A stretch of DNA of 64,000 nucleotides from Phyllobates terribilis (GCF_046119375.1 NW_027362761.1:803520001-803584000); one strand, 5' to 3'. Shown: positions 13,130 to 37,540, counted from the stretch's first letter. Translations and numbers: made by a program. The notes: a model not told the origin generated them from the sequence alone.

Positions 13130-13544
13130 CTTAAGTCCCTGCGGTTTATCAGTGAATGTGTAGGAGATGCTCCTAACGTGTCTCCCCGAGCTGTATACAC
13201 CCAACTCTGTCAACAGACATTATTTGAATCTTTACGGTACGGCGCATGCTCATAGCAACCATGTAAGCGGCGCGTACTGATGACGGAACGCACTCCAGGC
13301 AGCCATGTTTCATTGGGGAAAACCCCATACTGTACTATAAATCCCAATACGGGTGTAATAAAGCGGCTCCCTTGTCCTCCCCTTAATCACGGTCTCTGGG
13401 TATTCGTAGTAGCAGTCTGTAGTGTGTTTGGCCCTTGTTGCTGTGACTTTTAGAATCCGGAACTGTAATGGATGAGGCAGTGTTGTGAGCCGGGCCGGTG
13501 AGGTGACGGGACACAGAGTGTAGCTGCTTCCTCTCCTTCTGCAG
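13130..13544. promoter_or_regulatory. Putative bidirectional HELQ/MRPS18C promoter with probable HELQ non-coding first exon (minus-strand donor AAG|GTAAGG at 13129)
   Basis: Local CpG enrichment; TGACG/CGGAA at 13281-13288; YY1-like GCAGCCATGTTT 13299-13310; ZNF143-like ACTATAAATCCCA 13334-13346; CCGGAA 13457-13462. Start sites are inferred, not seen. Confidence 0.55.
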
Positions 13545-13569
13545 GTCACAGGATACAGTGTGGGGAAGG

Positions 13570-13651
13570 ATGCTGCTGGTCACGGTACTGCGGGGAGCTG
13601 TGCTGAGGCGGCTGCCGGTCCTGTACTCCTCCTCCTCTGTACACAGCACAG
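13570..13651 (+). CDS. MRPS18C: MRPS18C first coding exon (mitochondrial presequence)
   Basis: ATG plus 27 codons rich in R/L/S/V with no acidic residue; ends CAG|GTAAGG in phase 1, as the next exon requires. It is the only array unit with an in-frame ATG and an upstream pyrimidine tract. Confidence 0.8.
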
Positions 13652-16600
13652 GTAAGGACTGGCAGGATAGGTCACAGGATACAGTGTGGGGTAGGGGGTG
13701 CTGGTCAGGGTACTACCGGGTCCTGTGCACCTCCTCCTCTGTACACAGCAAAGGTAAGGACTGATGCACTGGCAGCATAGGTCACAGGATACAGTGTGGG
13801 GTAGGAGGGTGCTGCCGAGTCCTGTGCACCTCCTCCTCTGTACACAGCACAGGTAAGGACTGATGCACTGGCAGCATAGGTCACAGGATACAGTGTGGGG
13901 TAGGAGGGTGCTGCCGGGTCCTGTGCACCTCCTCCTCTGTACACAGCACAGGTAAGGACTGATGCACTGGCAGGATAGGTCACAGGATACAGTGTGGGGT
14001 AGGAGGGTGCTGCCGGGTCCTGTGCACCTCCTCCTCTGTACACAGCAAAGGTAAGGACTGATGCACTGGCAGCATAGGTCACAGGATACAGTGTGGGGTA
14101 GGAGGGTGCTGCCGGGTCCTGTGCACCTCCTCCTCTGTACACAGCACAGGTAAGGACTGATGCCCTGGCAGCATAGGTCACAGGATACAGTGTGGGGTAG
14201 GAGGGTGCTGCCGGGTCCTGTGCACCTCCTCCTCTGTACACAGCAAAGGTAAGGACTGATGCACTGGCAGGATAGGTCACAGGATACAGTGTGGGGTAGG
14301 GGGTGCTGGTCAGGGTACTGCGGGGAGCTGTGCTGAGGCGGCTGCCGGTCCTGTGCACCTCCTCCTCTGTACACAGCACAGGTAAGGACTGGTGCACTGG
14401 CAGGACAGGTCACAGGATACAGTATGGGGTAGGAGTGTGCTGCCGGGTCCTGTGCACCTCCTCCTCTGTACACAGCAAAGGTAAGGACTGATGCACTGGC
14501 AGGATAGGTCACAGGATACAGTATGGGGTAGGGGGTGCTGGTCATGGTACTGCGGGGTCATGTGCACCTCCTCCTCTGTACACAGCACTGGTAAGGACTG
14601 GTGCACTGGCAGGACAGGTCACAGGATACAGTGTGGGGTAGGGGGGTGCTGGTCAGGGTGCTGCGGGGTCCTGTGCACCTCCTCCTCTGTACACAGGAAA
14701 GTGTAAGGTGCCCCAGCGAGGTAGTCGTGGGCGAGCTGTAGCCCCCTCTCGCTATGGCACCCTACAGACAATACGTGTCCTCCCTCTGAAGTGTGGCTGT
14801 GTATGTGGTGCTCTTCACTTACTTCAAGCCATCCGATCGCGGCTGTCTCCAGGCATTTCTCTTCTGGGACCAGGGCAGCAATAAATTCAGAGGACACAAG
14901 GGTCTTAACCAGAACTTGGACTTTACTTGGGGAAGAGGAATATGTACAATATTTACAGGCAGATATAATGGATAAGGCCCGACAGGTTACCATCTCTCTC
15001 ACAGGCGCTGGTAACTCCTTCAGCCCTGGTTCCCTCTTGAAATGAAGCATCTCTGTGACTCTAATCTCTGGCCCAAGAGACTCTTCTGCAATATCAACAG
15101 TGATCGGGATCCGATATCTCTCCCCCACGTCTTAGCCTGGAGTCCTATTTATCTTCCTCTGCTTCCTGCAGACTAGAAGTGCCCCGGGTCCTAACTACCT
15201 TTGATGAGTTTCTCCGGCCGGCTAACAGGACTCTTGCTCTTGCGTAGGGAGACTTTCACACTGGTGATCCCACTGTCTGAGGGTATGGAGCTCCATTCTA
15301 CCCTAGCAGCCACATATATTAGCTGCCCGTACAATTCACTGTCCTATCTCTTACTGCCCTCTGGACACTAAAACAGAGGCTTTTTGCTAATGTGCCCACC
15401 CTCTGTGAGCTGTCATCACCAACATTAACCCATCACTGTCTGTAACACTGCTAGCAGACTCAACCTGACATCTGCACCCAGGACAGTGGTATCTTGTGGC
15501 TGATTACAGGTACTGCTTCCCGCAAGGAACTATGCCAGAGCTAACCCCTTAGCTTGGCCTACCACAGTTCAGAGAGGACTGATTAAGGGAACACTTTCCT
15601 TAACTACTTCAGTGCCAAAGGAAGGCTACATCCTTCCCCACTATTACATAAGGACTGGTGCACTGGCAGGATAGGTCACAGGATACAGTGTGGGGTAGGG
15701 GGTGCTGGTCATGGTACTGCGGGGTCCTGTGCACCTCCTCCTCTGTACACAGCACAGGTAAGGACTGGTGCACTGGCAGGATAGGTCACAGGATACAGTG
15801 TGTGGGGTAGGGGGGTGCTGGTCAGGGTACTGCGGGGTCCTGTGCAATTCCTCCTCTGTACACAGCACAGGTAAGGACTGGTGTACTGGCAGGATAGGTC
15901 ACAGGATACAGTGTGGGGTAGGGGGGTGCTGGTCATGGTACTGCGGGGTCCTGTGCACCTCTTCCTCTGTACACAGCACAGGTAAGGACTGGTGCACTGG
16001 CAGGATAGGTTACAGGATACAGTGTGGGGTAGGGGGGTGCTGGTCAGGGTACTGTGGGGTCCTGTGCAATTCCTCCTCTGTACACAGCACAGGTAAGGAC
16101 TGGGGACATGGAAGTTACATGTTACATAGAGCCATGATGGGTATTTTCAATCATTGGCTCCTTGGATTATTGACTGTCAGGATCTGGTCCATCAGCGAAT
16201 CACATCCCGGAGTTCACAGCTCCTCTTATGATTAGCCGATGCCACGTCATTGTTGTGGCGTAACGTACACGTGACATCTCGCCAGTTCGGCTCATCAAAA
16301 GGGCTGTGGTTACCGGGAGGGAGAAGGCGACTCTCAGGGCTACCGGGTTACTGATGTGGCCACTGGACCGGGTCCTGGTAAACAAATGGCACCAGTATTG
16401 CCTATGCCATAATAGTATGGGGTAGCCGAATGCTGTGCCTTTATGACCCCAAGAAAATCTCTATTGCACGTGTGTGATTTACTGATGTGTGACTGTTAAT
16501 ATGCTGTGGTGTCTGGGGCAGCAGCAAAGTGGATGAGGTGACGGCACATCTCATCCACATGCCACAGATATTTTCCTCTCAGAAATTGATTTGTGGCAGC

Positions 16601-19600
16601 ATGTCAGTTCTGATTGGAAATTCTTACGTATGTTCCTCAATGAGTTCAAAGGGGAAAATGGATTGGTGAAAGTACCAACATGGCCATAAAATTTATTATT
16701 TGAACTGGAATCTATTGGCCTTCTCAAGTGGCGGACACAATAAACCACAATTTTATCATTTAACTTTTAATGGTTGTGTGAAGGGATGGAGAGGTTCTGG
16801 AGCTCTGTATCAAAGCCAGGAACGCCAATCTATGAAAAGATATCATGATGGATCATAAAATTAATTAGTACAACATTTTAGGTTCAACAAACAAAATAAT
16901 ATCCAGAGTTAGATGCATTTGGTCAGTTAGGTAAAAGAACACTGTTAGAATAAGACACTTATTGACTGATGTTCTTCTTTTCCTAGTAACCCCAGACAGT
17001 AACCAAGCAACACTTGAAGATATGGTAAAGATAAAACTTTAGTACGGTGTAATAATAGTTTAATGCATGTATTATTTTTTTCTTATAGCGGCACCTAAGA
17101 CGTAATTGATGCTGTCATCCCCCGTCTGCATGATTGTTCGTTACTTTCTTAATCTTGTGAGACAGAAATGATGTGCTCTGCAGGCAGTAAATTCACATAT
17201 ATTGCAGCAATTTTTATGACACCATGTCATTTTGCTTGTAGTACTTATGATGCTGTTATTTCATGCGACTGTGCACTGAGCCTAAAGAATACATCAGGGC
17301 CATTCCGATAGGCCGCCATTCACTAGATCGAGGCCAAAAGTGTGTTCTTTTGTCCTTCGCCTGGCAGGTATGCGTCTGCATACCATTTGTTTTACTACAC
17401 TGCTCAAAAAAATAAAGGGAACACTTAACAGAATATAACTCCAAGTAAATCAAACTGTCCACTTATGAAGCAACACTGATTGACAATCAATTTCACATGC
17501 TGTTGTGCAAATGGAATAGACAATAGATGGAAATTATTGGCAATTATCAAGACACCCTCAATAAAGGAGTGGTTCTGCAGGTGGGGACCACAGACCACAT
17601 CTCAGTACCAATGCTTTCTGGCTGATGTTTTGTTCACTTTTGAATGTTGGTTGTGCTTTCATACTCGTGGTAGAATGAGACGGACTCTACAACCCACAGA
17701 AGTTGCTCAGGTAGTGCAGCTCATCCAGGATGGCACATCAATGCGAGCTGTGGCAAGAAGGTTTTCTGTGTCTGTCAGCGTAGTGTCCAGAGGCTGGAGG
17801 CGCTACCAGGAGACAGGCCAGTACACCAGGAGATGTGGAGGGGGCTGTAGGAGGGCAACAACCCAGCAGCAGGACCGCTACCTCCGCCTTTGTGCTAGGA
17901 GGAACAGTAGGAGCACTGCCAGAGCCCTGCAAAATGACCTCCAGCAGGCCACAAATGTGCATGTGTCTGCACAAACTGTTAGAAACCGACTCTATAGGGG
18001 TGGTATGAGGGCCCGACGTCCACAGATGGGGGTTGTGCTCACAGCCCAACACCGTGCAGGACTCTTGGCATTTGCCACAGAACACCAGGATTGGCAAAGT
18101 CGCCACTGGCGCCCTGTGCTCTTCACAGATGAAAGCAGGTTCACACTGAGCACATGTGACAGACGTGACAGAGTCTGGAGACGCCGTGGAGAGCGATCTG
18201 CTGCCTGCAACATCCTTCAGCATGACCGGTTTGGCAGTGGGTCAGTAATGGTGTGGGGTGGCATTTCATTGGAGGGCCGCACAGCCCTCCATGTGCTCGC
18301 CAGAGGTAGCCTGACTGCCATTAGGTACACAGATGAAATCCTCAGACCCCTTGTGAGACCATATGCTGGTGCGGTTGGCCCTGGGTTTCTCCTAATGCAG
18401 GACAATGCCAGACGTCATGTGGCTGCAGTGTGTCAGCAGTTCCTGCAAGATGAAGGCATTGAAGCTATGGACTGGCCCACCCGTTCCCCAGACCTGAATC
18501 CGATTGAGCACATCTGGGACATCATGACTCACTCCATCCACCAACGTCACGTTGCACCACAGACTGTCCAGGAGTTGGCGGATGCTTTAGTTCAGGTCTG
18601 GGAGGAGATCCCACAGGAGACCATCCACAACCTCATCAGGAGCATGCCCAGGCATTGTAGGGAGGTCATACAGGCACGTGGAGGCCACACACAATACTGA
18701 GCCTCATTTTGACTTGTTTTAAGGACATTACATCAAAGTTGGATCAGCCTGTAGTGTGCTTTTCCACTTTAATTTTGGGGGCGACTCCAAATCCAGGCCT
18801 CCATTGGTTAATAAATTTGATTTCCATTGATGATTTTTGTGTGATTTTGTTGTCAGCACATTCAACTTTGTACAGAACAAAGTATTCAGTGAGAATATTT
18901 CATTCATTCAGATCTAGGATGTGTTATTTGAGTGTTCCCTTTATTTTTTTGAGCAGTGTATATAGGAAATCGCAGCAGACTGGTTTCTTCTAAAAGCGGC
19001 CATAAAAAGGAAAAAAGGTTACTTTGCAGCAAGGCTGTGGAGTCGGTAAGCCAAACCTCCGACTCCTCAATTTCCATGACTCCGACTCCCTCATACATGG
19101 CTCATGTTTAAGTGATAAATTTACTGTAGCACAGATTCATCTCAGCTAAAAGTCTAGACCCTTAGGTCAGGAATAGGACAGACATTTATAGGACATTTCA
19201 TAACTTTCCCAAATTCTTATGAAAAAATATTCCCCACAAACTGCATTGAACTACTGTACCCAATTTACTATATATTTTAGGCGTTGGAGTCGGTTCATTT
19301 TATACCGACTCCACCAAAATGGGCTCCGACTCCAACTCCGCAGCCCTGCTTTGCAGTGTTTTCATCAATTACTCTTTATGGGGAACGGCTGTTGGGACAC
19401 TCATCCAGATAGTGGGGACAAGCTCAGGACAGGACTTGTGGCTGTGAGACAGACACAAAAATATAACAACGCACACGCCCCTTAGTGACATTATGTTTCA
19501 TGTGCCCTTTCCCTCCAAAGTTCTTGTCTAATGCCAAAGGCAGCATGAGTATAAAGGAATCTTCCTGTCCCCCCTCTGTATTAGTAGTAGCAGATCAGAA

Positions 19601-22600
19601 ACTTCACAACATTCTGATTTGTGGTAACGATGGCATCCTATGACAGTGCCACACTTGTACAACTCCTAATAATGGAGGGATTTGGCCAGGCCTTTACGCC
19701 ACCTTCATGGTTTAAAAAGTTCATTTCAGTTCGCTCTATTTTTGCATTTTTTTTTTACCGATCTCAACACTTTTGAGAAGCAGCAAGAAAGCGGGGAAGG
19801 TTTTTTTTTTTTGAGAGGAGCAAAACCAACCACATGCTGACAATTTCCTATAATTTATGCCATAAATTTGTTAAAAAGGCAAATATGTGCCAAATTTATT
19901 AAGGGGTACTCCACTGGACATCTGCATGACTTGTTTGCAATAGGGGTGACTGAAATATCTGTTGAAAATGATAGAGCTGGATGATGGAGGCGCCTAGCTG
20001 CTGAAAGGGGAGAACTTTAATTTCGTTTGATCGATTCCTGTGGTTTTTTTGCCTTTATAGAGGAATCTGTATACAGTATTTAGCTTTTATTTACTACACT
20101 ATTTTCAGTCATTTATTTTTTTTAAATCCAATGTGTAAAAAATATCAGGTGTTTGTCACTTTTTATTGATTACAGCCACAGAAAATAGAAAATCCTTTTA
20201 AAGAGCCTCCAAAGAGGTGCATCTTGTGTGGCATCCCAGTAGATTACAAGAATACACAGGTATGTTTCTACAAGCTTAAAGGGGTTGGCCTCTACGTTAC
20301 ATGTCCCTCTCATGTGAACTAACTGCCATAGATAAATAAGCATTTCAATAAATATCTTGCTTTGTCAAATCTAGCTGTAACCTGAGCTGCTCTTCTGTTC
20401 ACATGATCTCTGGCAGACTTCTTGTGATGTCACTTCAAAATCTCCCTGAGTTCCTGGCTCTAGAATCTGATGGGTGGGTGGAGCTTGCCATGCTGGTGGG
20501 CGGTGCTCCATTCAGCCACCAATTGTGCAAGTTCTCCCACTTAAAAAGATGAGAGAGGCCTGTAATTGACATCATAGGTAGACCCCAACTATGAGAGACA
20601 AAATGAGAAAACAAATCCTGAAAATCACATTGTCTGATTTGGAAAGAATTTTTTTTTTTCAAATTTTGGTGGAAAATAAGTATTTGGTCACCTACAAACA
20701 AGCTAGATATCTGGCTCTCACAGACCTGTAACTTCTTCTTTAAGAGGCTCCTCTGTCCTCCACTCATTACCTGTAGTACTGGCACCTGTTTGAACTTGTT
20801 ATCAGTATAAAAGACACCTGTCTGCAACCTCAAACAGTCACACTCCAAACTCCACTATGGTGAGGACCAAAGAGCTGTCAAAGGACACCAGAAACAAAAT
20901 TGTAGCCCTGCACCAGCCTGGGAAGACTGAATCTGCAATAGGCAAGCAGCTTGGTGTGAAGAAATCCACTGTGGCAGCAATAATTAGAAATGGAAGACAT
21001 ACAAGACCACTGATAATCTCCCTCGATCTGAGGCTCCACACAAGTTCTCACCACGTGGGTTCAAAATGATCTCAAGAACTGTGAGCAAAAATCCCAGAAC
21101 CACACGAGGGGACCTAGTGAATGACCTGCAGAGAGCTGGGACCAACGTTACACATACTACGCCGCCAGGGACTCGGATCCTGCAGCGCCAGACGTGTCCC
21201 CCTGCTTAAGCCATTACATGTCTGGGCCCTTCTGAAGTTTGCTAGAGAGCATTTGGATGATCCAGAAAAGTATTGGGAGACTGTCATATGGTCAGATGAA
21301 ACCAAAGTAGAACAGTTTGGTAGAAACACAACTTGTCGTGTTTGGAGGAGAAAGAATGCTGAGTTGCATCCAAAGAACACCATACCTACTGTGAAGCATG
21401 GGGGTGGCAACATCATGGTTTGGGGCTGTTTCTCAGCCAATGGACTAGGACGACTGATCCGTGTACATGAAAGAATGAATGGGGCCATGTATCGTGAGAT
21501 TTTGAGTGCAAACCTCCTTCCATCAGCAATGACATGGAAGATGAAACGTGGCTGGGTCTTTCAGCATGACAATGATTCCAAGCACACCGCCAGGGCAATG
21601 AAGGAGTGGCTTCGTAAGAAGCATTTCAAGGTCCTGGAGTGGCCTAGCCCGTCTCCAGATCTAAACCCTATAGAAAACCTTTGGAGTGAGTTGAAAGTCC
21701 GTGTTGCCCAGCGACAGCCCCAAAACATCACTGCTCTAGAGGAGATCTGCATGGAGGAATAGGCCAACATACCAGCAACAGTGTATGCCAACCTTGTGAA
21801 GACTTATAGAAAACGTTTGACCTCTGTCATTGCCAACAAAGGATATTCAGTGGGTACAGAAAGTATTCAGACCCCTTTATATTTTTCACTCTGTTTCATT
21901 GCAGCCATTTGGTAAATTCTAAAAAGTTCATTTTTTTTCTCATTAAAGTACACTCTGCACCCCATCTTGACTGAAAAAAAACAGAAATGTAGAAATTTTT
22001 GAAAATTTATTAAAGAAAAACTGATATCACTTGGTCATAAGTATTCAGACCCTTTGCTCAGTATTGAGTAGAAGCGCCCTTTTGAGCTAGTACAGCCATG
22101 AGTCTTCTTGGGAATGATACAACAAGTGTTTCACACCTGGATTTGGGGATCCTCTGCCATTCTTCCTTGCAGATCCTCTCCAGTTCCATCAGGTTGGATG
22201 GTGAACGTTGGTGGACAGCCATTTTCAGGTCTCTCCAGAGATGTTCAATTGGGTTTAGGTCTGGGCTCTGGCTGGGCCAGTCAAGAATGGTCACAGTTTT
22301 TCTGAAGCCACTCCTTTGTTATTTTCGCTGTGTGATTAGGGTCAGTCTTGTTGGAAGGTGAACCTTCGGCCAAGTCTGAGGTCCAGAGCACTCTGGAAGA
22401 GGTTTTCATCCAGGATATCTCTGTTCTTGGCCGCATTCATGTTTCCTTCAATTGCAACCAGTCGTCCTGTCCCTGAAGCTGAAAAACACCTCCATAGCAT
22501 GATGCTGCCACCACCATGTTTCACTGTTGGAATTGTATTGGGCAGGTGATGAGCAGTTCCTGGTTTTCTCCACACATACCGCTTAGAATTATCACCAAAA

Positions 22601-25600
22601 AGTTCTATCTTCGTCTCATCAGACCAGAGAATCTTATTTCTCATAGTCTGGGAGTCCTTCATGTGTTTTTGAGCAAACTCTATGCGGGCTTTCATATGTC
22701 TTGCATTGAGGAGAGGCTTCCATCTGGCCACTCAGCCATAAAGGCCCGACTGGAGGGCTGCAGTGATAGTTGACTTTGTGGAACTTTCTCCCATCTCCCT
22801 ACTGCATCTCTGGAGCTCAACCACAGTGATCTTGGGGTTTTTCTTTACCTCTCTCTCCAAGGCTCTTCTCCCACGATTGCTCAGTTTGGCAGGACGGCCA
22901 GGTCTAGAAGACTTCTGTTGGTTCCCGACTTCTTCCATTTAAGGATTAATGAGGTCACTGTGCTCTTAGAAACCTTGAGTAATGCAGAAATTCTTTTGTA
23001 ACCTTGGCCAGATCTGTGCCTTGCCACAATTCTGTCTCTGAGCTCTTTGGGCAGTTCCTTTGAGCTCATGATTCTCATTTGGTCTCACATGCACTGTGAG
23101 CTGTGAGATCTTATATACAACCCCTGGCAAATTATGGAATCACTGGGCTCGGAGGATGTTCATTCAGTTGTTTAATGTTGTTGAAAAAAAAGCAGATCAT
23201 AGACATGTCACAAAACTAAAGTAATTTCAAATGGCAACTTTATGGCTTTAAGAAACACTAAAAGAAATCAAGATAAAAAATGTGGTACTCAGTAAGACTG
23301 TGTGCCCACTATGCGTTTTTTAAGCGTTTCCGCATCGGCAATTCCGCTGCAGAAACGCTTAAAAAACACTTGGTAGAAGGTCAGCCATGTTCCCCAATGA
23401 TAATCAGCATGTGCTGTGCACATGCTGGGGAAATTTCCGCTGCGGATTATCATTGCAGAAAAATCCGCAGCACTACCAATTATTTTGCGGAATTGCGGCG
23501 TTTTCGACGCCATTGACTTGCAATGGACCGCATGACATCCGCATCACTACATCTGCAGATGCGGATATATCATGCGGCTCAGTGTGCGGATGGAACCCGG
23601 GTTTGGAGAAGAGGAGACTCTCCTCCGGACCCGGGTACCATAGTACCTGTAAAAAAAAGAATAAAATAAAAAATATACATTATACTTACCTTCTGATGGC
23701 CCCCAGTCTCCATAGCGATGCGTCCTGGCTTGCCGGCAGCTTGCGATGGTCTAAAAAGGACCTACCATGACGTCATTTAGTCATGTGATGAGTCACGCGA
23801 CCGCCGACGTTGGTGGTCGCGTGTCCAATCACATGACTAAATGACGTCATGGCAGGTCCTTTTAGTCTACCGCGAGCTGCCGGCAAGCCAGGACGCATCG
23901 GATAAAGACACCGGGGGCCATCAGAAGGTAAGTATAATATTTATTTTTTTACCACTCTTTCGGTCACACTATATAAATCCATGCCGTTTGCATGGATTTA
24001 TATAGTGTGACCAAGTTGACAAGCACTTTCCAAGTGATGCTAAAATCGTTTGGAAAGCGCTTGACAACCCGCATGCGGAAATGCATGTGAAGAAAGCTTC
24101 ACATCCGCATGTCCCTGGCAGGAAAAACGCATGTAAAATCCTCATGCGTTTTTTCTGCAAGGGAGATGCAGAAACGCTCAGGAAAAATCCGGAGCATTTC
24201 TGCATCGTGGGCACATAGCCTAAGGCTATGTGCCCACGTTGCGGACCTGAAGCATATTTTTTACGCTTCTCCCTGGCGGGAAAATCGCATGCGGATATTA
24301 CATGCGGTTTTCCCGCCAGGTAGAAGCGTTTGTGAGGCGTCTTTGCATGCATTTCCGCATGCGGGTTATCAAGCACTTCTCCAAGCATCACTTGGAAAAG
24401 TGCTTGACAACTTGTTCAGAATGGTAAAAAATAAAAAAATAAACTTTATACTCACCTTCTGATGCATTCTCTGCCCCGTCCGGAGTCTTGAGCGGCTCAC
24501 GCTGTTGTGTGCAGGACCTGCGGTGACGTCATTGAGTCATGTGGTGGGTCACATGACTCAATGACGTGGCAGGTCCTTCAGACAACAGCGCGACGGAGGG
24601 AAAACATCAGAAGATAAGTATAAACTTTATTTTATTCTTTTTTTTACAGGTTCTTTGGTACCCAGGTCTGGAGGAGAGTCTCCTCTCCTCCAGACTTGGG
24701 TACCATCCGCACATTGATTCCGCAGCGCTTCCGCAAAATTAATGAACATGCTGCGGATTTTTGACTGCAGCATATACGCTGCGGAAAAATCCGCAGCATG
24801 GGCATTGACATTGCGGAATGCCATTGGGGACCATGGGGTGCGGATCTACATGCGTTTTTCAAGCGTTTACGCTGCGGAAATTCCGCAGCATATACGCTTG
24901 AAAAACGCTACGTGGGCACACAGCCTAAGGGTAACTTTTTTTCAGACCAAGCAGAGGGAAAAAATTATGGAATCACTCAATTCTGAGGAAAAAAATATGG
25001 AATCATGAAAAGCTTTGCAGGTTGGAGCCTTGTCATGGACCATTTTCTTCAACTTCCACCAAAGATTTCCAATTGGATTGAGATCCGGACTATTTGCTGG
25101 CCATGACATTGACCTTATGTGTCTTCTTTCAAGGAATGTTTTCAGTTTTTGCTCTATGGCAGGATGCATTATCATCTTGAAAAATGATGTCATCATCCCC
25201 AAACATCCTTTCAATTGATGAGATAAGAAAACTGTCCAAAATATCAATGTAAACTTGGGCATTTATTGACGATGTAATGACAGCCATCTCCCCAGTGCCT
25301 TTACCTGACGTGCAGCCCCATATCATCAATGACTGTGGAAATTTGCATGTTCTCTTCATGCAGTCATCTTTATAAATCTCATTGGAACGGCACCAAACAA
25401 AAGTTCCAGCATCATCACCTTGCCCAATGCAGATTCGCGATTCATCACTGAATATGACTTTCATCCAGTCATCCACAGTCCACGATTGCTTTTCCTTGGC
25501 CCACTGTAACCTTGTTTTTTTCTGTTTAGGTGTTAATGATGGCTTATGTTTAGCTTTTCTGTATGTAAATCCCATTTCCTTTAGGCGGTTTCTTACAGTT

Positions 25601-28600
25601 CGGTCACAGACATTGACTCCAGTTTCCTCCCATTCGTTCCTCATTTGTTTTGTTGTGCATTTCCTGTTTTGGAGACATATTGCTTTAAATTTCCGGTCTT
25701 GACGTTGTTTGCCTTTAACAACCTTCCCATGTTGTTTCTATTTGGTCCAGATTTTAGACACAGCTGACTGTGAACAACCAACATCTTCTGCAACATTGCA
25801 TGATGATTTACCTTCTTTTAAGAGTTTGATAATCCTCTCCTTTGTTTCAATTGACATCTCTCGTGTTGGAGCCATGATTCATGTCAGTCCACTTGATGCA
25901 ACAGCTCTCCAAGGTGTGATCACTCCTTTTTAGATGCAGACTAACGAGCAGATCTAATTTGATGCAGGTGTTAGTTTTGGAAATGAAAATTTAGAGGGTG
26001 ATTCCATAATTTTTTCCCTCTGCTTGATCTGTAAAAAATTACCCTTACCGAGTACCACATTTTTTTATTTCTTTTAGTGTTTCTTAAAGCCATAAAGTTG
26101 CCATTTGAAATGACTTTAGTTTTGTGCCATGTCTGTGATCTGCTTTTTTTTCAACAACATTAAACAACTGAATGAACATCCTCCGATCCCGGTGATTCCA
26201 TAATTTTTTTGCCAGGGGTTGTAGACAGGTATATGCCTTTCCAAATCAAGTCCTATCAGTTTAATTAAACCCAGCTGGACTCCAATGAAGGAGTACAACC
26301 ATCTCAAGGAGGATCAAAAGGAAATGGACAGCATGTGACTTAAATATAAGTGTCTGAGCAAAGAAAGGGTCTGAATACTTATGACCATGTGATATTTCAG
26401 TTTTTCTTTTTTAATAAATTTGCACAAATTTCTACATTTCTGTTTTTTTTCAGTCAAGATGGGGTGCAGAGTGTACTTTAATGAGAAAAAAAATGACCTT
26501 TTTAGAATTTACCAAATGGCGGAAATGAAACAAAGAGTGAAAAATTTAAAGGGGTCTGAATACTTTCCGTACCCACTGTATAACAAAGTATTGAGATGAA
26601 CTTTTGTAATTGACCAAATACTTATTTTCCACCAAAGTTTGAAAAAAAATTTCTTTCCAAATCAGACAATGATTTTCAGGATTTGTTTTCTCATCTTGTC
26701 TCTCATAGTTGAGGTCTACCTATGATGTCAATTACAGGCCTCTCTACTTTTTAAGTGGGAGAACTGCACAATTGGTGGCTGACCAAATACTTTTTTCCCC
26801 ACTGTACATACAAGGGTCTCTTGTATCTGTATGTACACACAGTACAGACCAAAAGTTTGCACACACCTTCTCATTTAAAGATTTTTTCTGTATTTTCATG
26901 ACTTTGAAAATTACATAGTAACATAGTTTGTAAAGCCGAATAAAGACTTGCGTCCATAAAGTTCGACCTGTTAGTTCTGTAATTGCTAAAGTTGATCCAG
27001 AGGAGGGCAAAAACCCCAAATGATTTAGCCAATCTTCACCTGAGGAAAAATTCCCTCCCGACTCTGAAACCAGCAGTCAGAATAAATCCCTGTATCAACC
27101 TACTATTTTATTTTATTTTTAAGTATATGCTGAAATCTGCCTGGTATCTAGAAAAGCATCCAGTCCCCGCTTGAACTGGTGTAGTGAATCCGACATTACC
27201 GTCTCCTCACTCAGTGAATTCCATATTCTCACTGCTCTTACCGTAAAGAACCCCTTCCTATGCTGGTGCTGAAACCTTTTCTCTTCCAGTCTTAGTGAGT
27301 GCCCTCTTGTTACCGTAATATCCCTCCTTTTGAACAAATCCCGGGCAAGATCTCTATACTGTCCCCTAACATATTTGTACACATCTATTATGTCCCCCCT
27401 CAACCTTCTCTTTTCCAGGCTGAATAGTCCTAGTTTTGCCAACCTCTCTGGGTATTGCAGTCCCTCCATTCCCTTTATTAATTTTGTTGCCCTCCTTTGT
27501 ACCTTTTTTTTTTTTTTTTCCTTTTCCAGCAATGTACCCTTCACCTCAATGCACTTCCAAATTGTACATTCACACTGAAGGCATCAAAACTATGAATTAA
27601 CACATGTGGAATTATATACTTAAAGGGGTATTCCCATCTCCAAGATTCTATCCCAATATGTAATAGGTGTAATAATAATAATAATAATATTATTAGCAAA
27701 TATCTTTAATTAGAAATGTAGTAATAGTACTTTTGATTCGCGATGTCTCTTTCCTCATGTGCAGACATTGCAGGATCTTAGGTATCCATGGTTACATCCA
27801 CTGATAAAGTCACAGTTAGTTAGCTAGTTGCTAGTGGACGTAACCATGGATACCTAAGGTCCTGCGATGCCTGCACATGAGGAAAGAGACATAGCGAATC
27901 AAAAATACTATACTACATTACTAATTGGAGATATTTGCTAATATTACTATTATTACACCTACTACATATTGGGATAGGATCTTGGAGATGGGAATACCCC
28001 TTTAACAAAAAAGTGTGAAACAACTGAAAATATGTCTTATACTCTAGGTTCTTCAAAGTAGCCACCTTTTGCTTTGATGACTGCTTTGCACACTCTTGGC
28101 ATTCTCTTGATGAGCTTTAAGAGGTAGTCACCGGAAATGATCTTCCAATAATCTTGAAGGAGTTCCCAGAGATGCTTAGTACTTGTTGGCCCTTTTGCCT
28201 TCACTCTGCGGTCCAGCTCACCCCAAACCATCTCGATTGGGTTCAGGTCTGGTGACTGTGGAGGCCAGGTCATCTGGCAAACCGGATGGAATAGCATGCC
28301 GCTGCAAGATGCTGTGGTAGCCATGCTGGTTCAGTATGCCTTCAATTTTGAATAAATCCCCAACAGTGTCACCAGCAAAGCACCCCCACACCATCACACC
28401 TCCTCCTCCATGCTTCATGGTGGGAACCAGGCATGTAGAGTCCATCCGTTCACCTTTGCTGCGTCGCACAAAGACACTGGTTGGAACCAAAGATCTCAAA
28501 TTTGGACTCATCAGACCAAAGCACAGATTTCCACTGGTCTAATGTCCATTCCTTGTGTTCTTTAGCCCAAACAAGTCTCTTCTGCTTGTTGCCTGTCCTT

Positions 28601-31600: not shown

Positions 31601-34600
31601 TAGCATTGTGTATAAGACTTTTTAGAAATCTCCTGCTGAGAGCTGACCTGTGTTGTGGACTTAATTTGCAGCATGTCAATTTATATGGTGGGTGTTACCA
31701 GAGATTTCACAGAAATATATGTATTCCATTATGTCAGTGACGAGGGGGATGTGTTTGTTTTTCTGTTCCATTAGTTTTTTAGCAGATCAAGAATCATTTT
31801 ATTGTAACTACTTAGCTAGAATGTTAGACAAAAAAAGGCTGAATTAGTAAAATAACTATAAAACGTGCACCAAAATAAAAATGAGGCAAAAAAAAAATAA
31901 CGGTGTGAGTTACTCTTCTTGTATCGCCCATAGCTCCTGTCTCAGTTTGTTTCACCTCACACTGGTCGCATTTATGGAAGGCATATAACAGGTAATTCTC
32001 AGGAGGATATTTTAGATCAACTTTCTCTGAAATGTTATGAACTGTGGTTTTATTAAACATTTTTGTCAATGTATAAAATATCATACTCAGTTTTCAGGAT
32101 TGTGAATTCGTTGGGAACAGATTCTTGCTAGTAATGCTGCATGGCATCAATATATCTGGATGTCATCTTAACAGGGTTTTCTAGTACTAGGATACTGCTG
32201 CCCTGTCCTTAATGTAGGTCTTGAATATCCGATCAATGGCCATTACACAGTGTGACAGAGCTGTGGTGGTCTGCTCCGTCACACTTATTACACCCAGAGC
32301 TGGTAACAGCTGATTGGAGGTGCCAAACCCATATTGATGACAGGGATAGGTCATCAATATTACAGCAATGAAAAAAACTTTTAAAAGTGGTTGTCCAGGT
32401 TTGGGATGAAAGTCTGCAGTCACGCAATGTGACTGTAGACTTCTGAATACTCACAGCGCACGCACTGCACATGGTCAGGATTCTCCGGTACCAGCGCAAG
32501 AGCGGGCGGTCATGTGACCACTAGTATGCGATTTGCATATTTCCAGACACATTCTGACTAGATGTGCGCAGTCTTGTTTAATACAAGTGAATTGAGCAAG
32601 AACAAGCACATCTAATTGGCACGCGATTGCCCGCAACGGAGAATCCTGAGTATGTTCGATGCACACGCTGTGAGGATACAGAAGTCTGAAATCACCTACT
32701 GACTGCAGTTTTTCATCCCAAACCTGGACAATTCCTTTAAGGAAAATGAACGTCATATAGAGAAGTTTTCCCACTTGAGGCTCCCCTGTGATGATATGGC
32801 CAGATCAGTTGATCTCTGTGGTGGATTTCAGATTTAGGCCACGTTCACACGTTCAATATTGAGTCAGCATTTTACATCAGTATTTGTAAGCCAAATCCAG
32901 GAGAGGGTGAAAAAACGGTAATTAGTTTTACCGGTAATTTTATTTCCAGGAGTCCATCCTGACAGCACCATGGAGGACGTCCTTCTTATCCTTTCAGAGA
33001 CAGGAAACACAGAGAGGTTAAAAGCCCTCCCCTTCCTCCACCCCTCAGTGTTATTTCTAAGTACCACACCAGGATGGTTGCAACAAACAGAACATTTTTA
33101 TTACAATTCTATATGCCAATGTTACTTAACACTGTATATGACATGAAAGAGAGGGAACTAACTGTGCTGTCAGGATGGACTCCTGGAAACACAATTACCG
33201 GTAAGACTAATTACTGTTTTCCAGGACGTCCCCCTGACAGAACCATGGAGAATACCAAAGTATTGAGTTGGGGTGGGACCACCGCATGGAGAACTTTCCT
33301 ACCAAAAGCCATTCTCTGACTGGCTAAAACATCTAGCTTGTAATGTCTAGAAAATGTACTTAGGTTAGACCAGTGTTTCCCAAACTCCAGTCCTCACGGC
33401 CCCCCACAGGTCATGTTTTCAGGATTTCTATAGTATTGCACAGATGAGAGAATTCCTGATACCTTGATGATACTTTCCATCACCTGTGCAATACTATGGA
33501 AATCCTGAAAACATGACCTGTGGGGTCCGTGAGGACTTGAATTTGGGAAACACTGGGTTAGACCAAGTTGTGGCCGTACATATCTGCTCCATCGAGGGCC
33601 CCCCCCCCTTTCTCCGCCCAAGAAGTGACCATTGATCGAGTCGAATGAGCCCTCAACTCAACAGGAGGGATCGTTCTTTCTGCTGAATAGGCTAGAACTA
33701 TTGTAGACTTAATCCACCTGGCAACTGTCTTTTTTGACGCTTTTTTTACCTTTATTTCTACCCACAAACTGGACAAACAGGTTGTGATCCTGTCTCCAAC
33801 CCTGGGTGGCCTTTAACCACTTTACAGCCTGTGCCATATTTGTACGCAACAGGCTGTAACCCCCGGTTCAGTGAGGGCTCCGGCGCTGAGCCCGCACTGA
33901 ACCGGGCACATGTCAGCTGGTTATTACAGCTGACATGTGCCCGCAGCAACCGCGGGTGGAATCGCGATCCACCCGCGGCTGTTAACCAGTTAAATGCCGC
34001 TGCCAATCTCTGACAGCGGCATTTAACATCGCCGCGCTGGAAGCGCGTCACTTACCCCGCCCATCGGTGACCCCGTCACGTGATCGCGGGTCACCAATGT
34101 GTGGGCATGACAACCCTGGGTCTGCAGCAGACTGCAGTGGTTGTCATGAGCGGATCACTATGAGCGCCACCTAGTGGTCGGCGCTCATAGCACAGGACCA
34201 TTTCTGCTACATAGAGGTGATCTTCTGATCACCTCTATGTAGCAGAGGCGATCAGACAAGTGATGCTTCTAGTCTCCTATGGAGACTATAGAAACAAGCA
34301 TAAAGTGAAAAAAAAAAATGTTTTTTAAAAAAATATAAAAGTTTAAATCACTCCACTCAAAATAAAATAAAAAAAAACACATACACATATTTGGTATCTC
34401 TGCGTTCAGAATCGCCTGATCTATCAATATAAAAAAATAATTAATCCGATCGGTAAACGGCATAACGAGAAAAAAATTCTAAAAGCCAGAATTACTTTTT
34501 TTGGGTTGCCTCAACATTGCAATAAAATGCAAAACATCTGATCTACCCCAAAATGGTATCAATAAGAACTTCAGCTCGGTGCGCAAAAAATAAGCCCTCA

Positions 34601-37540
34601 TCCGGCCCCAGATCCCAAAAAATGGAGACGCTACGGGTCTTGGAAAATGGCGCCATTTTTTTTCACCACTTAAATAAAAAAGAACCTATACAGTTATATG
34701 AAAAAGTTTGGGCACCCCTATTAATCTTAAGCTTAATGTTTTATAAAAATTGGTGTTTTTGCAACAGCTATTTCAGTTTGATATATGTAATAACTGTTGG
34801 ACACAGTAATGTTTCTGCCTTGAATTGATGTTTATTGTACTAACAGAAAATGTGCAATCTGCATTCAAACAAAATTTGACAGGTGCATAAGTATGGGCAC
34901 CTCACCAGAAAAGTGACATTAATATTTAGTAGATCCTCCTTTTGCAAAAATAACAGCCTCAAGTCGCTTCCTGTAGCTTTTAATGAGTTCCTGGATCCTG
35001 GATGAAGGTATTTTTGACCATTCCTCTTTACAAAACAATTCCAGTTCAGTTAAGTTTGATGGTCGCCGAGCATGGACAGCCCTCTTCAAATGATCCCACA
35101 GATGTTCAATGATATTCAGGTCTGGGGACTGGGATGGCCATTCCAGAACATTGTAATTGTTCCTCTGCATGAATGCCAGAGTAGATTTGGAGCGGTGTTT
35201 TGGATCATTGTCTTGCTGAAAGATCCATCCCCTGCGTAACTTCAACTTTGTCACTGATTCTTGAACATTATTGTCAAGAATCTGCTGATACTGAGTGGAA
35301 TCCATGCGTCCCTCAACTTTAACAAGATTCCCGGTGCCGGCATTGGCCACACAGCCCCAAAGCATGATGGAACCTCCACCAAATTTTACTGTGGGTAGCA
35401 AGTGTTTTTCTTGGAATGCTGTGTTTTTTTTCCGCCATGCATAACGCCTTTTTGTATGACCAAACAACTCAATCTTTTTTTCATCAGTCCTCAGGACATT
35501 CTTCCAAAAAGAAATTGGCTTCTCCAAATGTGCTTTTGCATACCTCAGCCGACTCTGTTTGTGGCATGCTTGCAGAAACGGCTTCTTTCGCATCACTCTC
35601 CCATACAGCTTCTCCTTGTGCAAAGTGCGTTGTATAGTTGACCGATGCACAGTGACACCATCTGCAGCAAGTTGATGTTGCAGCTCTCTGGAGGTGGTCT
35701 GAGGATTGTCCTTGACTGATCTCACCATTCTTCTCTGCCTTTCTGATGTTTTTCTTGGCCTGACACTTCTGGCCTTAACAAGAACTGTCCCTGTGTTCTT
35801 CCATTTCCTTACTATGTTCCTCACAGTGGAAACTGACAGGTTAAATCTCTGAGACAGCTTTTTGTATCCTTCCCCTGAACAACTATGTTGAATAATCTTT
35901 GTTTTCAGATCATTTGACAGTTGTTTTGAGGAGCCCATGATGCCACTCTTCAGAGGAGATTCAAACAGGAGAACAACTTGCAAGTGGCCACTTTAAGTAG
36001 CTTTTCTCATGATTGCATACACCTGGCTATGAAGTTCAAAGCTCAATGAGGTTACAAAACCAAAAAAAGTGCTCTAGTAAGTCAGTAAAAAGTAGGTAGG
36101 AGTATTTAAAACAAGAAAATGATAAGGGTGCCCATACTTATGCACCTGTCAAATTTTGTTTGAATGCAGATTGCACATTTTCTGTTAGTACAATAAACCT
36201 CATTTCAAGGCAGAAACATTACTGTGTCCAACAGTTATTACATATATCAAACTGAAATAGCTGTTGCAAAAACACCAATTTTTATAAAACATTAAGCTTA
36301 AGATTAATAGGGGTGCCCAAACTTTTTCATATAACTGTATATGTTTGGTGTCTATGAACTCGTAATGACCTGGACAATAATAATGGCAGGTCAGTTTTAG
36401 CATTCAGTGAAAGTGGTAAAAAAAATAAAAAAACATCTGTGGTATTGCACTTTTTTTGCAATTTCACCGCACTTGGATTTTTTTTTCCCGTTTTCCCGTA
36501 CACAATATGGTAAAACTAGTAATGGCATTGAAAAGTACAACTTGTCCCGTAAAAAATAAGCCCTCACAAGGCCTTATTGACCAAAAAATAAAAACGCTAT
36601 CGCTCTGGGAACAAGGGGAGCAAAAACAAAAATGCAAAAACTGAAAATCCCAGGGTTGCGAAGGGGTTAAATAAGCGATGACTGCTTGCCTAACATCCAG
36701 GGAATGGAAGAAGGCTTCTTTTTGATTTTTAGGATTCTGACAAAAGGACGGAAGTACGCAGGCTGCTTCACAGGAGGAAGGAGAGGTTCTGCGCTGGCCG
36801 GTCCCCTGAGCCCGCACACAGGTACGCTCTTCTGCGCACATCACCTCTCTGTTCCCATTCTCACAGGGACAGGAAAAACACTGAGGGGTGGACGAAGGGG
36901 AGGGCTTTTAACCCCTCTGTGTTTCCTTTCCCTGAAAGGATAAGAAGGACGTCCTCCATGGTGCTGTCAGGGGGACATCCTGAAAATACAGAAATGGTGC
37001 ACGTGTTTCTATTATCCTTTTCCTGATTGCTCCACTCTTGATTTTGGCTTACAAATACTGATCGTGTGAACGTGGCCTTGAAAGGTTGTCTGTGAAGAGA
37101 AACCTTATGTTGTGGTCGCAGTTTAACTGCAAATATCTTCCATTGGAGAAAAAGTTGCAAGTGTTTTTTGCAAATCTTTCCTCTTTGGGAGTAATTTAAT
37201 GGGCATTATAGCTATAAGTTTCAGTCACTGTACAGCCTTAAGCCTTAGTGGTATTTCTATCTCAATATATAGCAAGGCTGTGTTGACACGTTGCTGGCTG
37301 TTGGTGAAATTGTATATAACCATTGCACTGTTACTTCTTTTACAGGGTTATGTGGTCTGAAACAAAGGGCAGTAGCAAAAGCCATTAAAAGAGCGAATAT
37401 TATGGGTAAGTTATAGTTTGCGTCTTTTTCTTCCCTTCATGATTTTGTACATAACGCATGAAATTTGTCTTCTAGGGTTTATGCCAGTCACATACAAGGA
37501 CCCTGCCTACCTCAAAGACCCAAAGATTTGTGATGTTTAA
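13570..37540 (+). CDS. MRPS18C: Mitochondrial ribosomal protein S18C (bS18m), 128 aa; exons 13570-13651, 16987-17024, 20176-20259, 31934-31991, 37346-37405, 37476-37540
   Basis: Joined CDS is 387 nt and open: [129 protein letters not shown]18 signature with CxxC; AATAAA at 37553-37558. Confidence 0.93.
14702..15648. mobile_element. Solo LTR (947 bp)
   Basis: TGTAA...TTACA termini; 4-bp flanks AAAG/TAAG (TSD with one mismatch); the array resumes exactly after it. Confidence 0.75.
16987..17024 (+). CDS. MRPS18C: MRPS18C exon ([12 protein letters not shown])
   Basis: TTCTTCTTTTCCTAG acceptor and GTAAAG donor; phase 1 to 0. Confidence 0.8.
17398..18958 (+). mobile_element. Tc1 element with open DD34E transposase ORF (17675-18700, 341 aa)
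   Basis: Identical 28-bp TIRs CACTGCTCAAAAAAATAAAGGGAACACT; TA flanks; FTDE...QDN-34-E. Confidence 0.95.
19030..19348. mobile_element. hAT-type MITE
   Basis: Same family as 11742; exact TSD CTTTGCAG. Confidence 0.85.
20176..20259 (+). CDS. MRPS18C: MRPS18C exon ([28 protein letters not shown])
   Basis: 84 nt with CxxC; GTATGT donor. Confidence 0.95.
23118..26221 (-). mobile_element. Tc1 element C nested in B (3' part of transposase deleted)
   Basis: TA|CAACCCCTGGCAAA...TTTGCCAGGGGTTG|TA; ORFs 24942-25644 ([17 protein letters not shown]). Confidence 0.88.
23296..24924. mobile_element. Two Harbinger-like non-autonomous elements in tandem (23296-24220, 24224-24924) nested in C
   Basis: G(G/A)CT(A/G)TGTGCCCAC termini; TAA at 23293-95, 24221-23 and 24925-27. 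Confidence 0.75.
26913..27558 (-). mobile_element. 5'-truncated CR1-type LINE 3' end
   Basis: [11 protein letters not shown]...[11 protein letters not shown]2 C-terminus; (CTATGTTA)n-type tail at 26913-26926; possible TSD AAATT. Confidence 0.85.
27624..28001. mobile_element. Near-perfect palindromic Kolobok/T2-type MITE
   Basis: TTAA|AGGGGTATTCCCATCTCCAAG...CTTGGAGATGGGAATACCCCT|TTAA. Confidence 0.88.
29570..30403. mobile_element. piggyBac-like non-autonomous element fragment
   Basis: Ends AAGGGG|TTAA; homologous to the copies at 33817 and 49258; left edge approximate. Confidence 0.7.
30408..30944. mobile_element. Kolobok/T2-type MITE
   Basis: TTAA|AGGGGTTTTCCCA...GGGAAAATGCCT|TTAA; partial copy near 56215-56650. 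Confidence 0.75.
31934..31991 (+). CDS. MRPS18C: MRPS18C exon ([19 protein letters not shown])
   Basis: 58 nt S18 core; AG/GT boundaries. Confidence 0.95.
32385..32736. mobile_element. Kolobok/T2-type MITE
   Basis: TTAA flanks; GTCCAGGTTTGGGATGAAA / TTTCATCCCAAACCTGGAC arms. Confidence 0.7.
33371..33555. mobile_element. hAT-type MITE inside the mini-DIRS
   Basis: CAGTGTTTCCCAAA TIRs; exact 8-bp TSD GGTTAGAC. Confidence 0.88.
33817..36666. mobile_element. piggyBac-like non-autonomous element inside the mini-DIRS
   Basis: TTAA at 33813-16 and 36667-70; removing it restores the recombinase frame (AYL-KATQGW). Confidence 0.82.
34691..36337 (-). mobile_element. Young Tc1 element with open DD34E transposase (ATG 35938 to stop 34919, 339 aa) and ~210-bp TIRs
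   Basis: TA TSD on both sides; TIRs differ at about 2 positions; TDE...QDN-34-E. Confidence 0.95.
37346..37405 (+). CDS. MRPS18C: MRPS18C exon ([21 protein letters not shown])
   Basis: 60 nt; GTAAGT donor. Confidence 0.95.
37476..37540 (+). CDS. MRPS18C: MRPS18C last coding exon ([20 protein letters not shown])
   Basis: Follows a 70-nt intron; TAA at 37538-37540. Confidence 0.95.

What the first reader, a model, noticed from the sequence alone, without database searches (positions are those of the whole stretch)
13545..16102. A tandem array made from the mitochondrial-presequence exon of MRPS18C, multiplying its splice donor
Seen: unit 1 (13545-13670) is the real first coding exon (ATG 13570, [27 protein letters not shown], then CAG|GTAAGG). 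The following units are copies of that exon plus its donor. Intact GTAAGG donors start at 13652, 13754, 13853, 13952, 14051, 14150, 14249, 14382, 14481, 14591, 15758, 15871, 15982 and 16093; a 15th is broken by an LTR. Only unit 1 keeps an in-frame ATG and an upstream pyrimidine tract. Unit 8 (~14276-14408) keeps the full [13 protein letters not shown] segment but with GTG instead of ATG. Inference: an essential housekeeping gene tolerates, or is tuned by, a VNTR of 14 near-identical U1 sites, so copy number could act as a splicing/NMD rheostat for a mitoribosomal protein. I do not recognise this as described.
Basis: partly seen in the sequence, partly recalled or inferred. Interest (0 to 1): 0.85.

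Follow-up and report, generated by a model that had tools for sequence, protein, structure and literature searches.

The report
Exon-derived minisatellite repeating a splice donor
In the golden poison frog, the first coding exon of the mitochondrial ribosomal protein gene MRPS18C and its splice donor were copied into a 15-unit tandem array inside intron 1; this kind of repeat is already known from several human genes, where the extra donors stay largely silent.

Summary
Window 13544-16103 carries 15 head-to-tail units of 93-133 bp, and GTAAGG occurs at all 14 listed positions plus 14703. A 940-bp solo-LTR-like insert interrupts unit 11.

The gene is MRPS18C (bS18m). My six-exon model starting at ATG 13570 gives 128 aa. 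It is 100% identical to RefSeq XP_073493211.1 of Phyllobates terribilis, the only protein of this species among the hits.

Exon 1 is ancestral. Its peptide is conserved across neobatrachian frogs, and Leptodactylus fuscus and Pristimantis euphronides each have a single exon 1 with no reiterated donor. The array copies keep three ancestral bases that unit 1 has since changed.

The "splicing/NMD rheostat" idea has no support, and the class is already described. Minisatellites whose first monomer spans an exon-intron boundary are known from human F7, IFI 6-16, CBS, LMNB2 and PDGF. There only the most upstream donor, or the first two or three, is used (PMC1557585).

Most likely this is a lineage-specific, tolerated intronic minisatellite with silent pseudo-donors. 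Donor 2 would add 34 aa in frame; donors 3 and later meet a stop at 13762. No RNA or population data could be tested. It is a new member of a known kind, of modest interest.

The parts
13527..13540 (+). 14-nt pyrimidine run (CTTCCTCTCCTTCT) just upstream of unit 1. It is conserved in Leptodactylus and in a relative's mRNA. It lies inside the 5'UTR and is not a used acceptor. It may be a TOP/TCT-like start region (inference).
   Evidence: the relative's mRNA L001 runs straight through it, and the block is identical in L003.
13544..13669 (+). Unit 1 (126 bp): the last 26 nt of the 5'UTR, coding exon 1 (ATG 13570 to 13651, 82 nt, phase 1), and the first 18 nt of intron 1 with the authentic donor CAG|GTAAGG at 13652.
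13670..14708 (+). Units 2-11. Units 2 and 10 are the 110-bp type. Units 3-7 and 9 are the 99-bp type with a 198-bp higher-order period. Unit 8 is the full 133-bp type. Unit 11 is cut by the insert. All lack the ATG and each carries GTAAGG.
14709..15648 (.). 940-bp solo-LTR-like insertion with TG...CA ends, flanked by the 5-bp duplication TAAGG (14704-14708 and 15649-15653). No second copy in the window.
   Evidence: self-hit only.
15649..16103 (+). Rest of unit 11 and units 12-15 (110-113-bp type). Donors at 15758, 15871, 15982 and 16093. Unique intron sequence follows from about 16104.
13762..13764 (+). First in-frame TGA met when exon 1 is read on into the array. It lies in the 8-nt insertion of the intron part of unit 2. 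It makes any use of donors 3-15 end early.
16987..17024 (+). MRPS18C exon 2 (38 nt), with acceptor ...ttcctag| and donor ATG|GTAAAG.
20176..20259 (+). MRPS18C exon 3.
   Evidence: PDB bS18m chains, E 5e-9.
31934..31991 (+). MRPS18C exon 4 (Ribosomal_S18 domain).
   Evidence: PF01084, E 4e-6.
37346..37405 (+). MRPS18C exon 5 (Ribosomal_S18 domain).
   Evidence: PF01084, E 4.5e-6.
37476..37540 (+). MRPS18C exon 6 with stop codon; AATAAA follows about 20 nt downstream.
   Evidence: PDB bS18m chains, E 2e-9.

Best explanation
This is a lineage-specific intronic minisatellite. It arose by tandem duplication of a 126-133-bp segment spanning the end of the 5'UTR, the whole first coding exon of MRPS18C, and the first 18-26 nt of intron 1. 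One early copy lost the start codon. That copy was then amplified by unequal exchange or slippage, with internal deletions giving the 110-bp and 99-bp types and a 198-bp higher-order repeat. A solo-LTR-like element later landed in unit 11. The copies are dead pseudo-exons whose donors are pseudo-sites. The pre-mRNA is spliced from the most upstream donor (13652) to exon 2 (16987) and the whole array is removed with intron 1, as in the human genes of this class. Rare use of donor 2 would give an in-frame +34-aa protein. Use of donors 3-15 would give transcripts with an early stop, expected to be degraded. The array is tolerated rather than used. Shown: the anatomy, the gene identity, that exon 1 is ancestral, that two other hyloid frogs lack the array, and that the annotated product starts from donor 1. 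Inferred: the silence of the pseudo-donors, the way the first donor is preferred, and neutrality.
For: Array anatomy. Gene identity: Ribosomal_S18 on exons 4 and 5; bS18m/S18c chains of solved mitoribosomes as best hits for exons 3 and 6; HELQ-like and ABRAXAS1-like neighbours. The six-exon model from ATG 13570 with all GT-AG introns gives 128 aa, 100% identical to XP_073493211.1 of Phyllobates terribilis. The annotated gene span of 23,971 bp equals 13570-37540. No second protein of this species appears among the best 120 of 490 hits, though a 162-aa donor-2 product would fall in the length range searched. A relative's mRNA (L001) is spliced at the same exon 1/2 junction and holds one unit only. 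The exon 1 peptide is conserved in 15 frog species. Leptodactylus (L003) and Pristimantis (L002) have one exon 1 and no reiterated donor. Array units keep AGG and TGC ACC, as Leptodactylus does, where unit 1 has ACG and TAC TCC. Signs of decay and tolerance: ATG lost in all copies, internal deletions, a 940-bp insertion, and a weakened donor context in units 10 and 11. Precedent: in F7, LMNB2 and PDGF only the authentic upstream donor is used; in IFI 6-16 and CBS two further proximal sites are used too. F7 pseudo-sites are functional but lose to the most upstream one (PMC1557585).
Against: No RNA data from this species could be read, so silence of donors 2-15 is inferred from one RefSeq model, whose RNA support at exon 1 I could not inspect, and from mammalian precedents. 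Eight of the downstream donors are identical to the authentic one over all 9 positions. Other experimental systems with duplicated donors gave the opposite preference; the F7 paper itself notes contradictory results. The F7 case concerns an internal exon and a 37-bp monomer, whereas here it is the first exon and monomers of 99-133 bp. Neutrality cannot be shown from one haplotype.
Confidence: 0.7

Rival explanations
1. The 14 extra U1 sites compete with the authentic donor, a share of transcripts uses donors 3-15 and is lost to nonsense-mediated decay, so array length sets the output of MRPS18C.
For: Eight downstream donors are identical over 9 nt to the authentic one and five more match 7 of 9. 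Donors 3-15 all lead to the stop at 13762. [quoted passage not shown]
Against: No isoform from a downstream donor appears in the protein hits for this species, and the 64-aa read-through peptide is in no collection. In the best-studied case the pseudo-sites do not compete at all. The array shows decay, with deletions, an insertion and weakened contexts, rather than maintenance. Length variation is untested. Where proximal pseudo-sites are used, the nearest one here (donor 2) is in frame and would not trigger decay.
Confidence: 0.08
2. The array helps expression. A block of promoter-proximal U1 sites in the sense direction boosts transcription or protects the long first intron, including the poly(A) signal brought in by the insert, from premature cleavage.
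For: The donors lie 80-2,500 nt from the start codon in the sense strand, at a promoter region shared head-to-head with the HELQ-like gene. AATAAA occurs at 14880 inside the insert and at 16739, both flanked by donors. The roles of U1 in promoter directionality and in suppressing premature polyadenylation are established knowledge, cited here from memory and not tested.
Against: There is no evidence specific to this locus. Two other hyloid frogs express the gene without any array. The array predates the insert, which interrupts a unit.
Confidence: 0.07
3. The units act as dual-specific or recursive splice sites. Each has a pyrimidine run followed by CACAG|GTAAGG, so exon 1 could be joined to the AG of a later unit. 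That would regenerate the same donor and remove the array stepwise without a trace in the mRNA.
For: Each unit carries CCTCCTCCTCTGT, then ACACAGCACAG|GTAAGG, with 15 of 20 pyrimidines at -5 to -24 by my count. AGGT sites that serve as both donor and acceptor are enriched in tandem repeats and are used in the UBC gene (PMC10809524).
Against: An AG lies 5 nt upstream of the junction AG. Under the usual first-AG rule it would be chosen and would add 5 nt, shifting the frame. No clear branch-point match was found. No RNA evidence exists.
Confidence: 0.05
4. The array, or its length, is an assembly artefact of a repeat-rich 12-Gb genome.
For: Tandem repeats are often mis-sized. The published draft of this species reports heavy repeat collapse (PMC12208295); that is a different assembly, GCA_045270155.1.
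Against: The units are individually distinct, with three size classes, private substitutions and a higher-order pattern. The array holds a unique insertion with a clean target-site duplication. It is flanked by unique sequence that matches the annotated gene. Collapse would reduce the number of units, not create them.
Confidence: 0.05

Closest known systems
Human F7 intron 7 minisatellite (37 bp x 5-9), first monomer spanning the exon 7/IVS7 boundary (PMC1557585)
   Same: A tandem array whose first unit holds the authentic exon-intron junction, so the donor is reiterated identically in the intron of an essential gene. The pseudo-sites are potentially functional.
   Different: The F7 monomer holds only the last 4 bp of the exon; here it holds the whole first coding exon plus 26 nt of 5'UTR. 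F7 involves an internal exon; here it is the first exon. F7 is shown to be polymorphic and its splicing was tested; here neither is known.
Human LMNB2 (100 bp x 10-15), PDGF intron 4 (81 bp x 16-18), IFI 6-16 intron 2 (25 pseudo-sites) and CBS intron 13 (15-20 repeats), as listed in PMC1557585
   Same: Similar monomer size and copy number (LMNB2, PDGF). Only the authentic donor is used in LMNB2 and PDGF; the authentic donor plus two proximal pseudo-sites are used in IFI 6-16 and CBS.
   Different: Different genes and lineage (mammal versus frog). I have these cases only from that paper's introduction and did not compare sequences.
Dual-specific AGGT splice-site arrays in tandem-repeat genes such as UBC (PMC10809524)
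   Same: A tandem array in which every unit boundary carries AG|GT.
   Different: UBC units are coding and are spliced to give variable numbers of monomers. Here the units are intronic pseudo-exons, and no use as acceptors is shown.

Membership tests
Minisatellite whose first monomer spans an exon-intron boundary (F7 IVS7 class) | Head-to-tail array of many monomers of tens to about 100 bp | tested here: met
   15 units of 93-133 bp; TRF scores 548-1178.
Minisatellite whose first monomer spans an exon-intron boundary (F7 IVS7 class) | The first monomer contains the authentic exon-intron junction | tested here: met
   Unit 1 holds exon 1 and donor 13652. The model equals XP_073493211.1.
Minisatellite whose first monomer spans an exon-intron boundary (F7 IVS7 class) | [quoted passage not shown] | tested here: met
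   GTAAGG in all 15 units; 9 of 15 read CAG|GTAAGG.
Minisatellite whose first monomer spans an exon-intron boundary (F7 IVS7 class) | Only the most upstream donor(s) are used in normal transcripts | tested here: inconclusive
   The only protein of the species among the hits uses donor 1, and a relative's mRNA uses the same junction. No RNA reads of this species could be examined.
Minisatellite whose first monomer spans an exon-intron boundary (F7 IVS7 class) | Copy number varies between alleles (VNTR) | not testable with these tools
   One haplotype only. DNA of the source record could not be fetched.
MRPS18C / bS18m gene | Ribosomal_S18 domain | tested here: met
   PF01084 on the exon 4 and exon 5 pieces, E 4e-6, above the gathering score.
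MRPS18C / bS18m gene | Closest to bS18m (S18c) rather than other S18 paralogues | tested here: met
   The only significant PDB hits are '28S ribosomal protein S18c / bS18m' chains. Protein hits are named bS18m/S18c.
MRPS18C / bS18m gene | Conserved neighbourhood: HELQ head-to-head, ABRAXAS1 tail-to-tail | tested here: met
   Neighbour products carry DEAD/Helicase_C/HTH_61/POLQ_helical and MPN_2A_DUB_like. The order is the same in Anomaloglossus and Leptodactylus. The gene names are my reading of the domains.
MRPS18C / bS18m gene | N-terminal mitochondrial presequence | not tested
   The peptide is Arg/Leu-rich and conserved among frogs. No targeting predictor was available.
Recursive / dual-specific splice sites | Pyrimidine tract followed by AG|GTAAG | tested here: inconclusive
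   The motif is present in every unit, but a competing AG lies 5 nt upstream.
Recursive / dual-specific splice sites | Use of the site as an acceptor (lariat or junction reads) | not testable with these tools
   No RNA reads.
Solo LTR | TG...CA termini and a 4-6-bp target-site duplication | tested here: met
   14709 TG ... CA 15648, with TAAGG on both sides.
Solo LTR | Homology to the LTRs of a full-length element | tested here: inconclusive
   No other copy in the window. No frog repeat library was available.

The most novel reading that the evidence does not exclude
The array is not inert. Its chain of identical donor (and possibly acceptor-like AG|GT) sites changes how intron 1 is removed or how much MRPS18C mRNA is made, for instance by stepwise dual-specific splicing or U1 loading near the promoter. 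Array length would then be a heritable modifier of mitoribosome protein supply in dendrobatid frogs.
Probability: 0.1. Interest if true: 0.6.

Novelty: new member of a known kind. Interest (0 to 1): 0.3.

Why it matters
This is a clean non-mammalian example of a boundary-spanning minisatellite. It is unusual in that the monomer is a complete first coding exon with its donor, in an essential housekeeping gene. The copies act as dated fossils: they keep three ancestral bases that the working exon has since replaced, all by amino-acid changes in the presequence. With 8 donors identical to the real one over 9 nt, spaced 99-133 nt apart, the locus is a natural test of how a first-exon donor is chosen. 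Existing RNA-seq and long reads could settle that without any manipulation. If the extra donors prove silent, as expected, the finding is an ordinary if tidy structural variant.

Tried and rejected
1. Pfam gave nothing for the exon 2, 3 and 6 pieces. Identity of exons 3 and 6 came from PDB sequence hits instead.

2. The first protein alignment, with all exon pieces (A1), misplaced exons 1-3. I dropped it and used A2.

3. DNA could not be fetched for the source record or for Anomaloglossus because the files were too large. I therefore could not check a second haplotype or the nearest annotated relative. The Eleutherodactylus protein was not on record.

4. The 64-aa read-through peptide (13570-13761) is not in the protein collection. 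This is weak negative evidence only.

5. A test for selection on the donors by column invariance was uninformative. 58 of 90 shared columns are invariant, and long blocks other than the donor are too.

6. I rejected an upstream acceptor at 13544. The relative's mRNA runs through that site unspliced.

7. I rejected a genome-wide repeat that merely overlaps the exon. No unit occurs elsewhere in the window, and the units align to exon 1 of other frogs.

8. One paper search failed on a syntax rule, and one Pfam call failed on a frame error.

9. I ran no further search on array ORFs. Short-read assemblies would not resolve the array.

10. A slip to report: while reasoning I wrote out from memory a stretch of the human MRPS18C protein. 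All comparisons rest on tool-returned sequences.

Full report
WHAT IS THERE

Window 13544-16103 holds a tandem array. Tandem Repeats Finder reports periods of 99, 198 and 297 at 13611-14308 (scores 788-1178), period 99 at 14347-14708 and period 111 at 15649-16103. It is the only strong tandem array in the 64 kb. A 16-nt anchor marks 15 unit starts at 13544, 13670, 13780, 13879, 13978, 14077, 14176, 14275, 14408, 14507, 14617, 15674, 15784, 15897 and 16008. It occurs nowhere else in the window.

Aligned, the units fall into three size classes:
- Full length: unit 1 (126 bp) and unit 8 (133 bp).
- 110-113 bp, lacking a 23-nt stretch bounded by CTGCGG/CTGCCGG microhomology: units 2 and 10-15.
- 99 bp: units 3-7 and 9, with a 198-bp higher-order period at 97% identity.

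Units 2-14 are 86-99% identical to each other. Unit 1 is the outlier at 82-90%.

Between 14709 and 15648 lies a 940-bp insert with TG...CA ends and a 5-bp duplication (TAAGG) on both sides. It has no second copy in the window. I read it as a solo-LTR-like insertion.

Two details of the finding need correction. The 15th donor hexamer is intact, and only its context is damaged (AGT|GTAAGG, 5 of 9 consensus matches). Unit 8's GTG aligns to codon 2 of unit 1, not to the ATG.

THE GENE

Stop-free pieces of the + strand downstream contain four further exons.
- The exon 4 and 5 pieces hit Pfam Ribosomal_S18 above threshold.
- The exon 3 and 6 pieces hit only the bS18m / "28S ribosomal protein S18c" chains of solved mitoribosomes, with E values of 5e-9 and 2e-9.

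Joining 13570-13651, 16987-17024, 20176-20259, 31934-31991, 37346-37405 and 37476-37540 gives an open 128-aa frame, with AG before every internal exon and GT after every exon.

A search of representative proteins with the exon 6 piece, followed by a profile search, returned frog orthologues. The model is 100% identical over all 128 residues to [quoted passage not shown], XP_073493211.1.

That protein is encoded on a 1.24-Gb record of GCA_046119375.1. Its gene span of 23,971 bp is exactly 13570-37540. A helicase gene with DEAD, Helicase_C, HTH_61 and POLQ_helical domains lies upstream on the other strand, and I read it as HELQ. An MPN_2A_DUB_like gene lies downstream on the other strand, and I read it as ABRAXAS1. 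The same order holds in Anomaloglossus and Leptodactylus.

IS UNIT 1 ANCESTRAL?

Yes. The N-terminal peptide is recognisably conserved in 15 neobatrachian frogs.

Genomic DNA of Leptodactylus fuscus (L003) shows one exon 1 followed by unique intron and no tandem array. Pristimantis euphronides (L002) also has one exon 1 with CAG|GTAAGGAC. It has only an unrelated 28-bp minisatellite about 250 bp further on.

A 933-nt spliced transcript from a related frog (Logan run SRR32314942, L001) maps to exons 1 and 3-6 of the window with the exon 1 end at 13651. It contains a single unit. The same transcript, and Leptodactylus DNA, run uninterrupted through the pyrimidine run and "CAG" at 13527-13544. 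That tract is therefore 5'UTR, not a used acceptor. A 14-nt run starting with C at this place could be a TOP/TCT-type start region (inference).

THE COPIES ARE FOSSILS

In a four-way alignment the array units share AGG (Arg5) and TGC ACC (Cys20, Thr21) with Leptodactylus. Unit 1 has ACG and TAC TCC at these places. The duplication thus predates three substitutions in the working exon, all of which change an amino acid in the presequence. All copies share the same loss of the ATG, so they descend from one early copy that had already lost it.

WHAT THE EXTRA DONORS WOULD DO

Nine of the 15 sites read CAG|GTAAGG (8 of 9 consensus positions, identical to the real donor). Five match 7 of 9, and unit 11 matches 5 of 9.

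Reading on from ATG 13570 gives two outcomes. Donor 2 (13754) keeps the frame and would add 34 residues. Every later donor lies beyond an in-frame TGA at 13762, so those transcripts would carry an early stop.

No such product is on record. Among 490 hits to the protein only one is from this species, and it carries no isoform label. The 64-aa read-through peptide is absent from the collection.

COMPARISON WITH WHAT IS KNOWN

The arrangement is a described class. Borensztajn et al. [quoted passage not shown]
- F7 intron 7: 37 bp x 5-9.
- IFI 6-16 intron 2: 25 pseudo-sites.
- CBS intron 13: 15-20 repeats.
- LMNB2: 100 bp x 10-15.
- PDGF intron 4: 81 bp x 16-18.

In LMNB2, PDGF and F7 only the authentic, most upstream donor is used. 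In IFI 6-16 and CBS the two nearest pseudo-sites are used as well. [quoted passage not shown] They explain this by a 5'-to-3' oriented search that takes the first functional site.

The frog array meets the three structural criteria of this class. Usage and polymorphism could not be tested. It differs in that the monomer is the entire first coding exon plus part of the 5'UTR, and in concerning a first exon.

A second relevant report is that AG|GT sites able to act as donor and acceptor are enriched in tandem repeats and are used in UBC (PMC10809524). Each unit here has a pyrimidine run followed by CACAG|GTAAGG, so stepwise removal that regenerates the donor is conceivable. However, a competing AG 5 nt upstream would shift the frame, and there is no RNA evidence.

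VERDICT

The functional part, a rheostat, is unsupported, and the claim of novelty in kind is wrong.

The best explanation is a tolerated, lineage-specific minisatellite with silent pseudo-donors (confidence 0.7). The rivals are the decay rheostat (0.08), a positive U1-loading effect (0.07), dual-specific stepwise splicing (0.05), and an assembly artefact in unit number (0.05).

The decisive evidence is descriptive: junction counts in RNA reads, long genomic reads across the array, and the orthologous intron in other dendrobatids.

I stopped and did not use it in any call or in this report. All comparisons use sequences returned by the tools.

Noticed in passing
window 13570-13651 versus units 2-15 and L003:4001-4089: Unit 1 carries three derived substitutions relative to both the array copies and Leptodactylus. 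All change an amino acid (Arg5 to Thr, Cys20 to Tyr, Thr21 to Ser) in the presumed presequence; none is silent.
   Followed up: partly
window 13527-13551; L003:3957-3982; L001:213-238: A block of about 25 nt (a pyrimidine run, then GCAGGTCACAG) just upstream of the ATG is nearly identical between Phyllobates, a relative's mRNA and Leptodactylus. It may be a conserved start-site or 5'UTR element. The repeat unit begins right after the pyrimidine run.
   Followed up: partly
window 17480-18700 (+) and 34919-35983 (-): Two long open Tc1/mariner-type transposase frames (406 and 354 aa; HTH_Tnp_Tc3_2 plus DDE_3, the second with a Sleeping-Beauty-type HTH) lie in MRPS18C introns 2 and 4. Shorter fragments of the same kind are at 21121-21762 (+), 25129-25644 (-) and 28450-28980 (-).
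   Followed up: partly
window about 42200-46300 (+): A retroelement-like stretch. One frame hits reverse transcriptase RVT_1 (43741-44313, E 6e-13) and another hits LAP2alpha (42667-43296, E 8e-8). The coding capacity is spread over several frames. It lies inside the range of the ABRAXAS1-like gene.
   Followed up: no
window 37540 and 37881: The MRPS18C stop codon and the stop codon of the convergent ABRAXAS1-like gene are only about 340 bp apart, so their 3'UTRs may overlap.
   Followed up: no
window 37406-37475: MRPS18C intron 5 is only 70 nt long, while the other introns are 3-11 kb and full of transposons.
   Followed up: no
L002:3003-3723 and L002:4333-4642: The Pristimantis MRPS18C promoter and intron 1 region carries two unrelated minisatellites (25-bp and 28/84-bp periods). 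Neither includes the exon or its donor.
   Followed up: partly
window 13240-13470: Upstream of the 5'UTR there is a GCGCATGC-like motif, CCGGAA motifs and a TATAAA at about 13337. From memory, these resemble NRF-1 and GABP sites typical of nuclear genes for mitochondrial proteins. Not tested.
   Followed up: no
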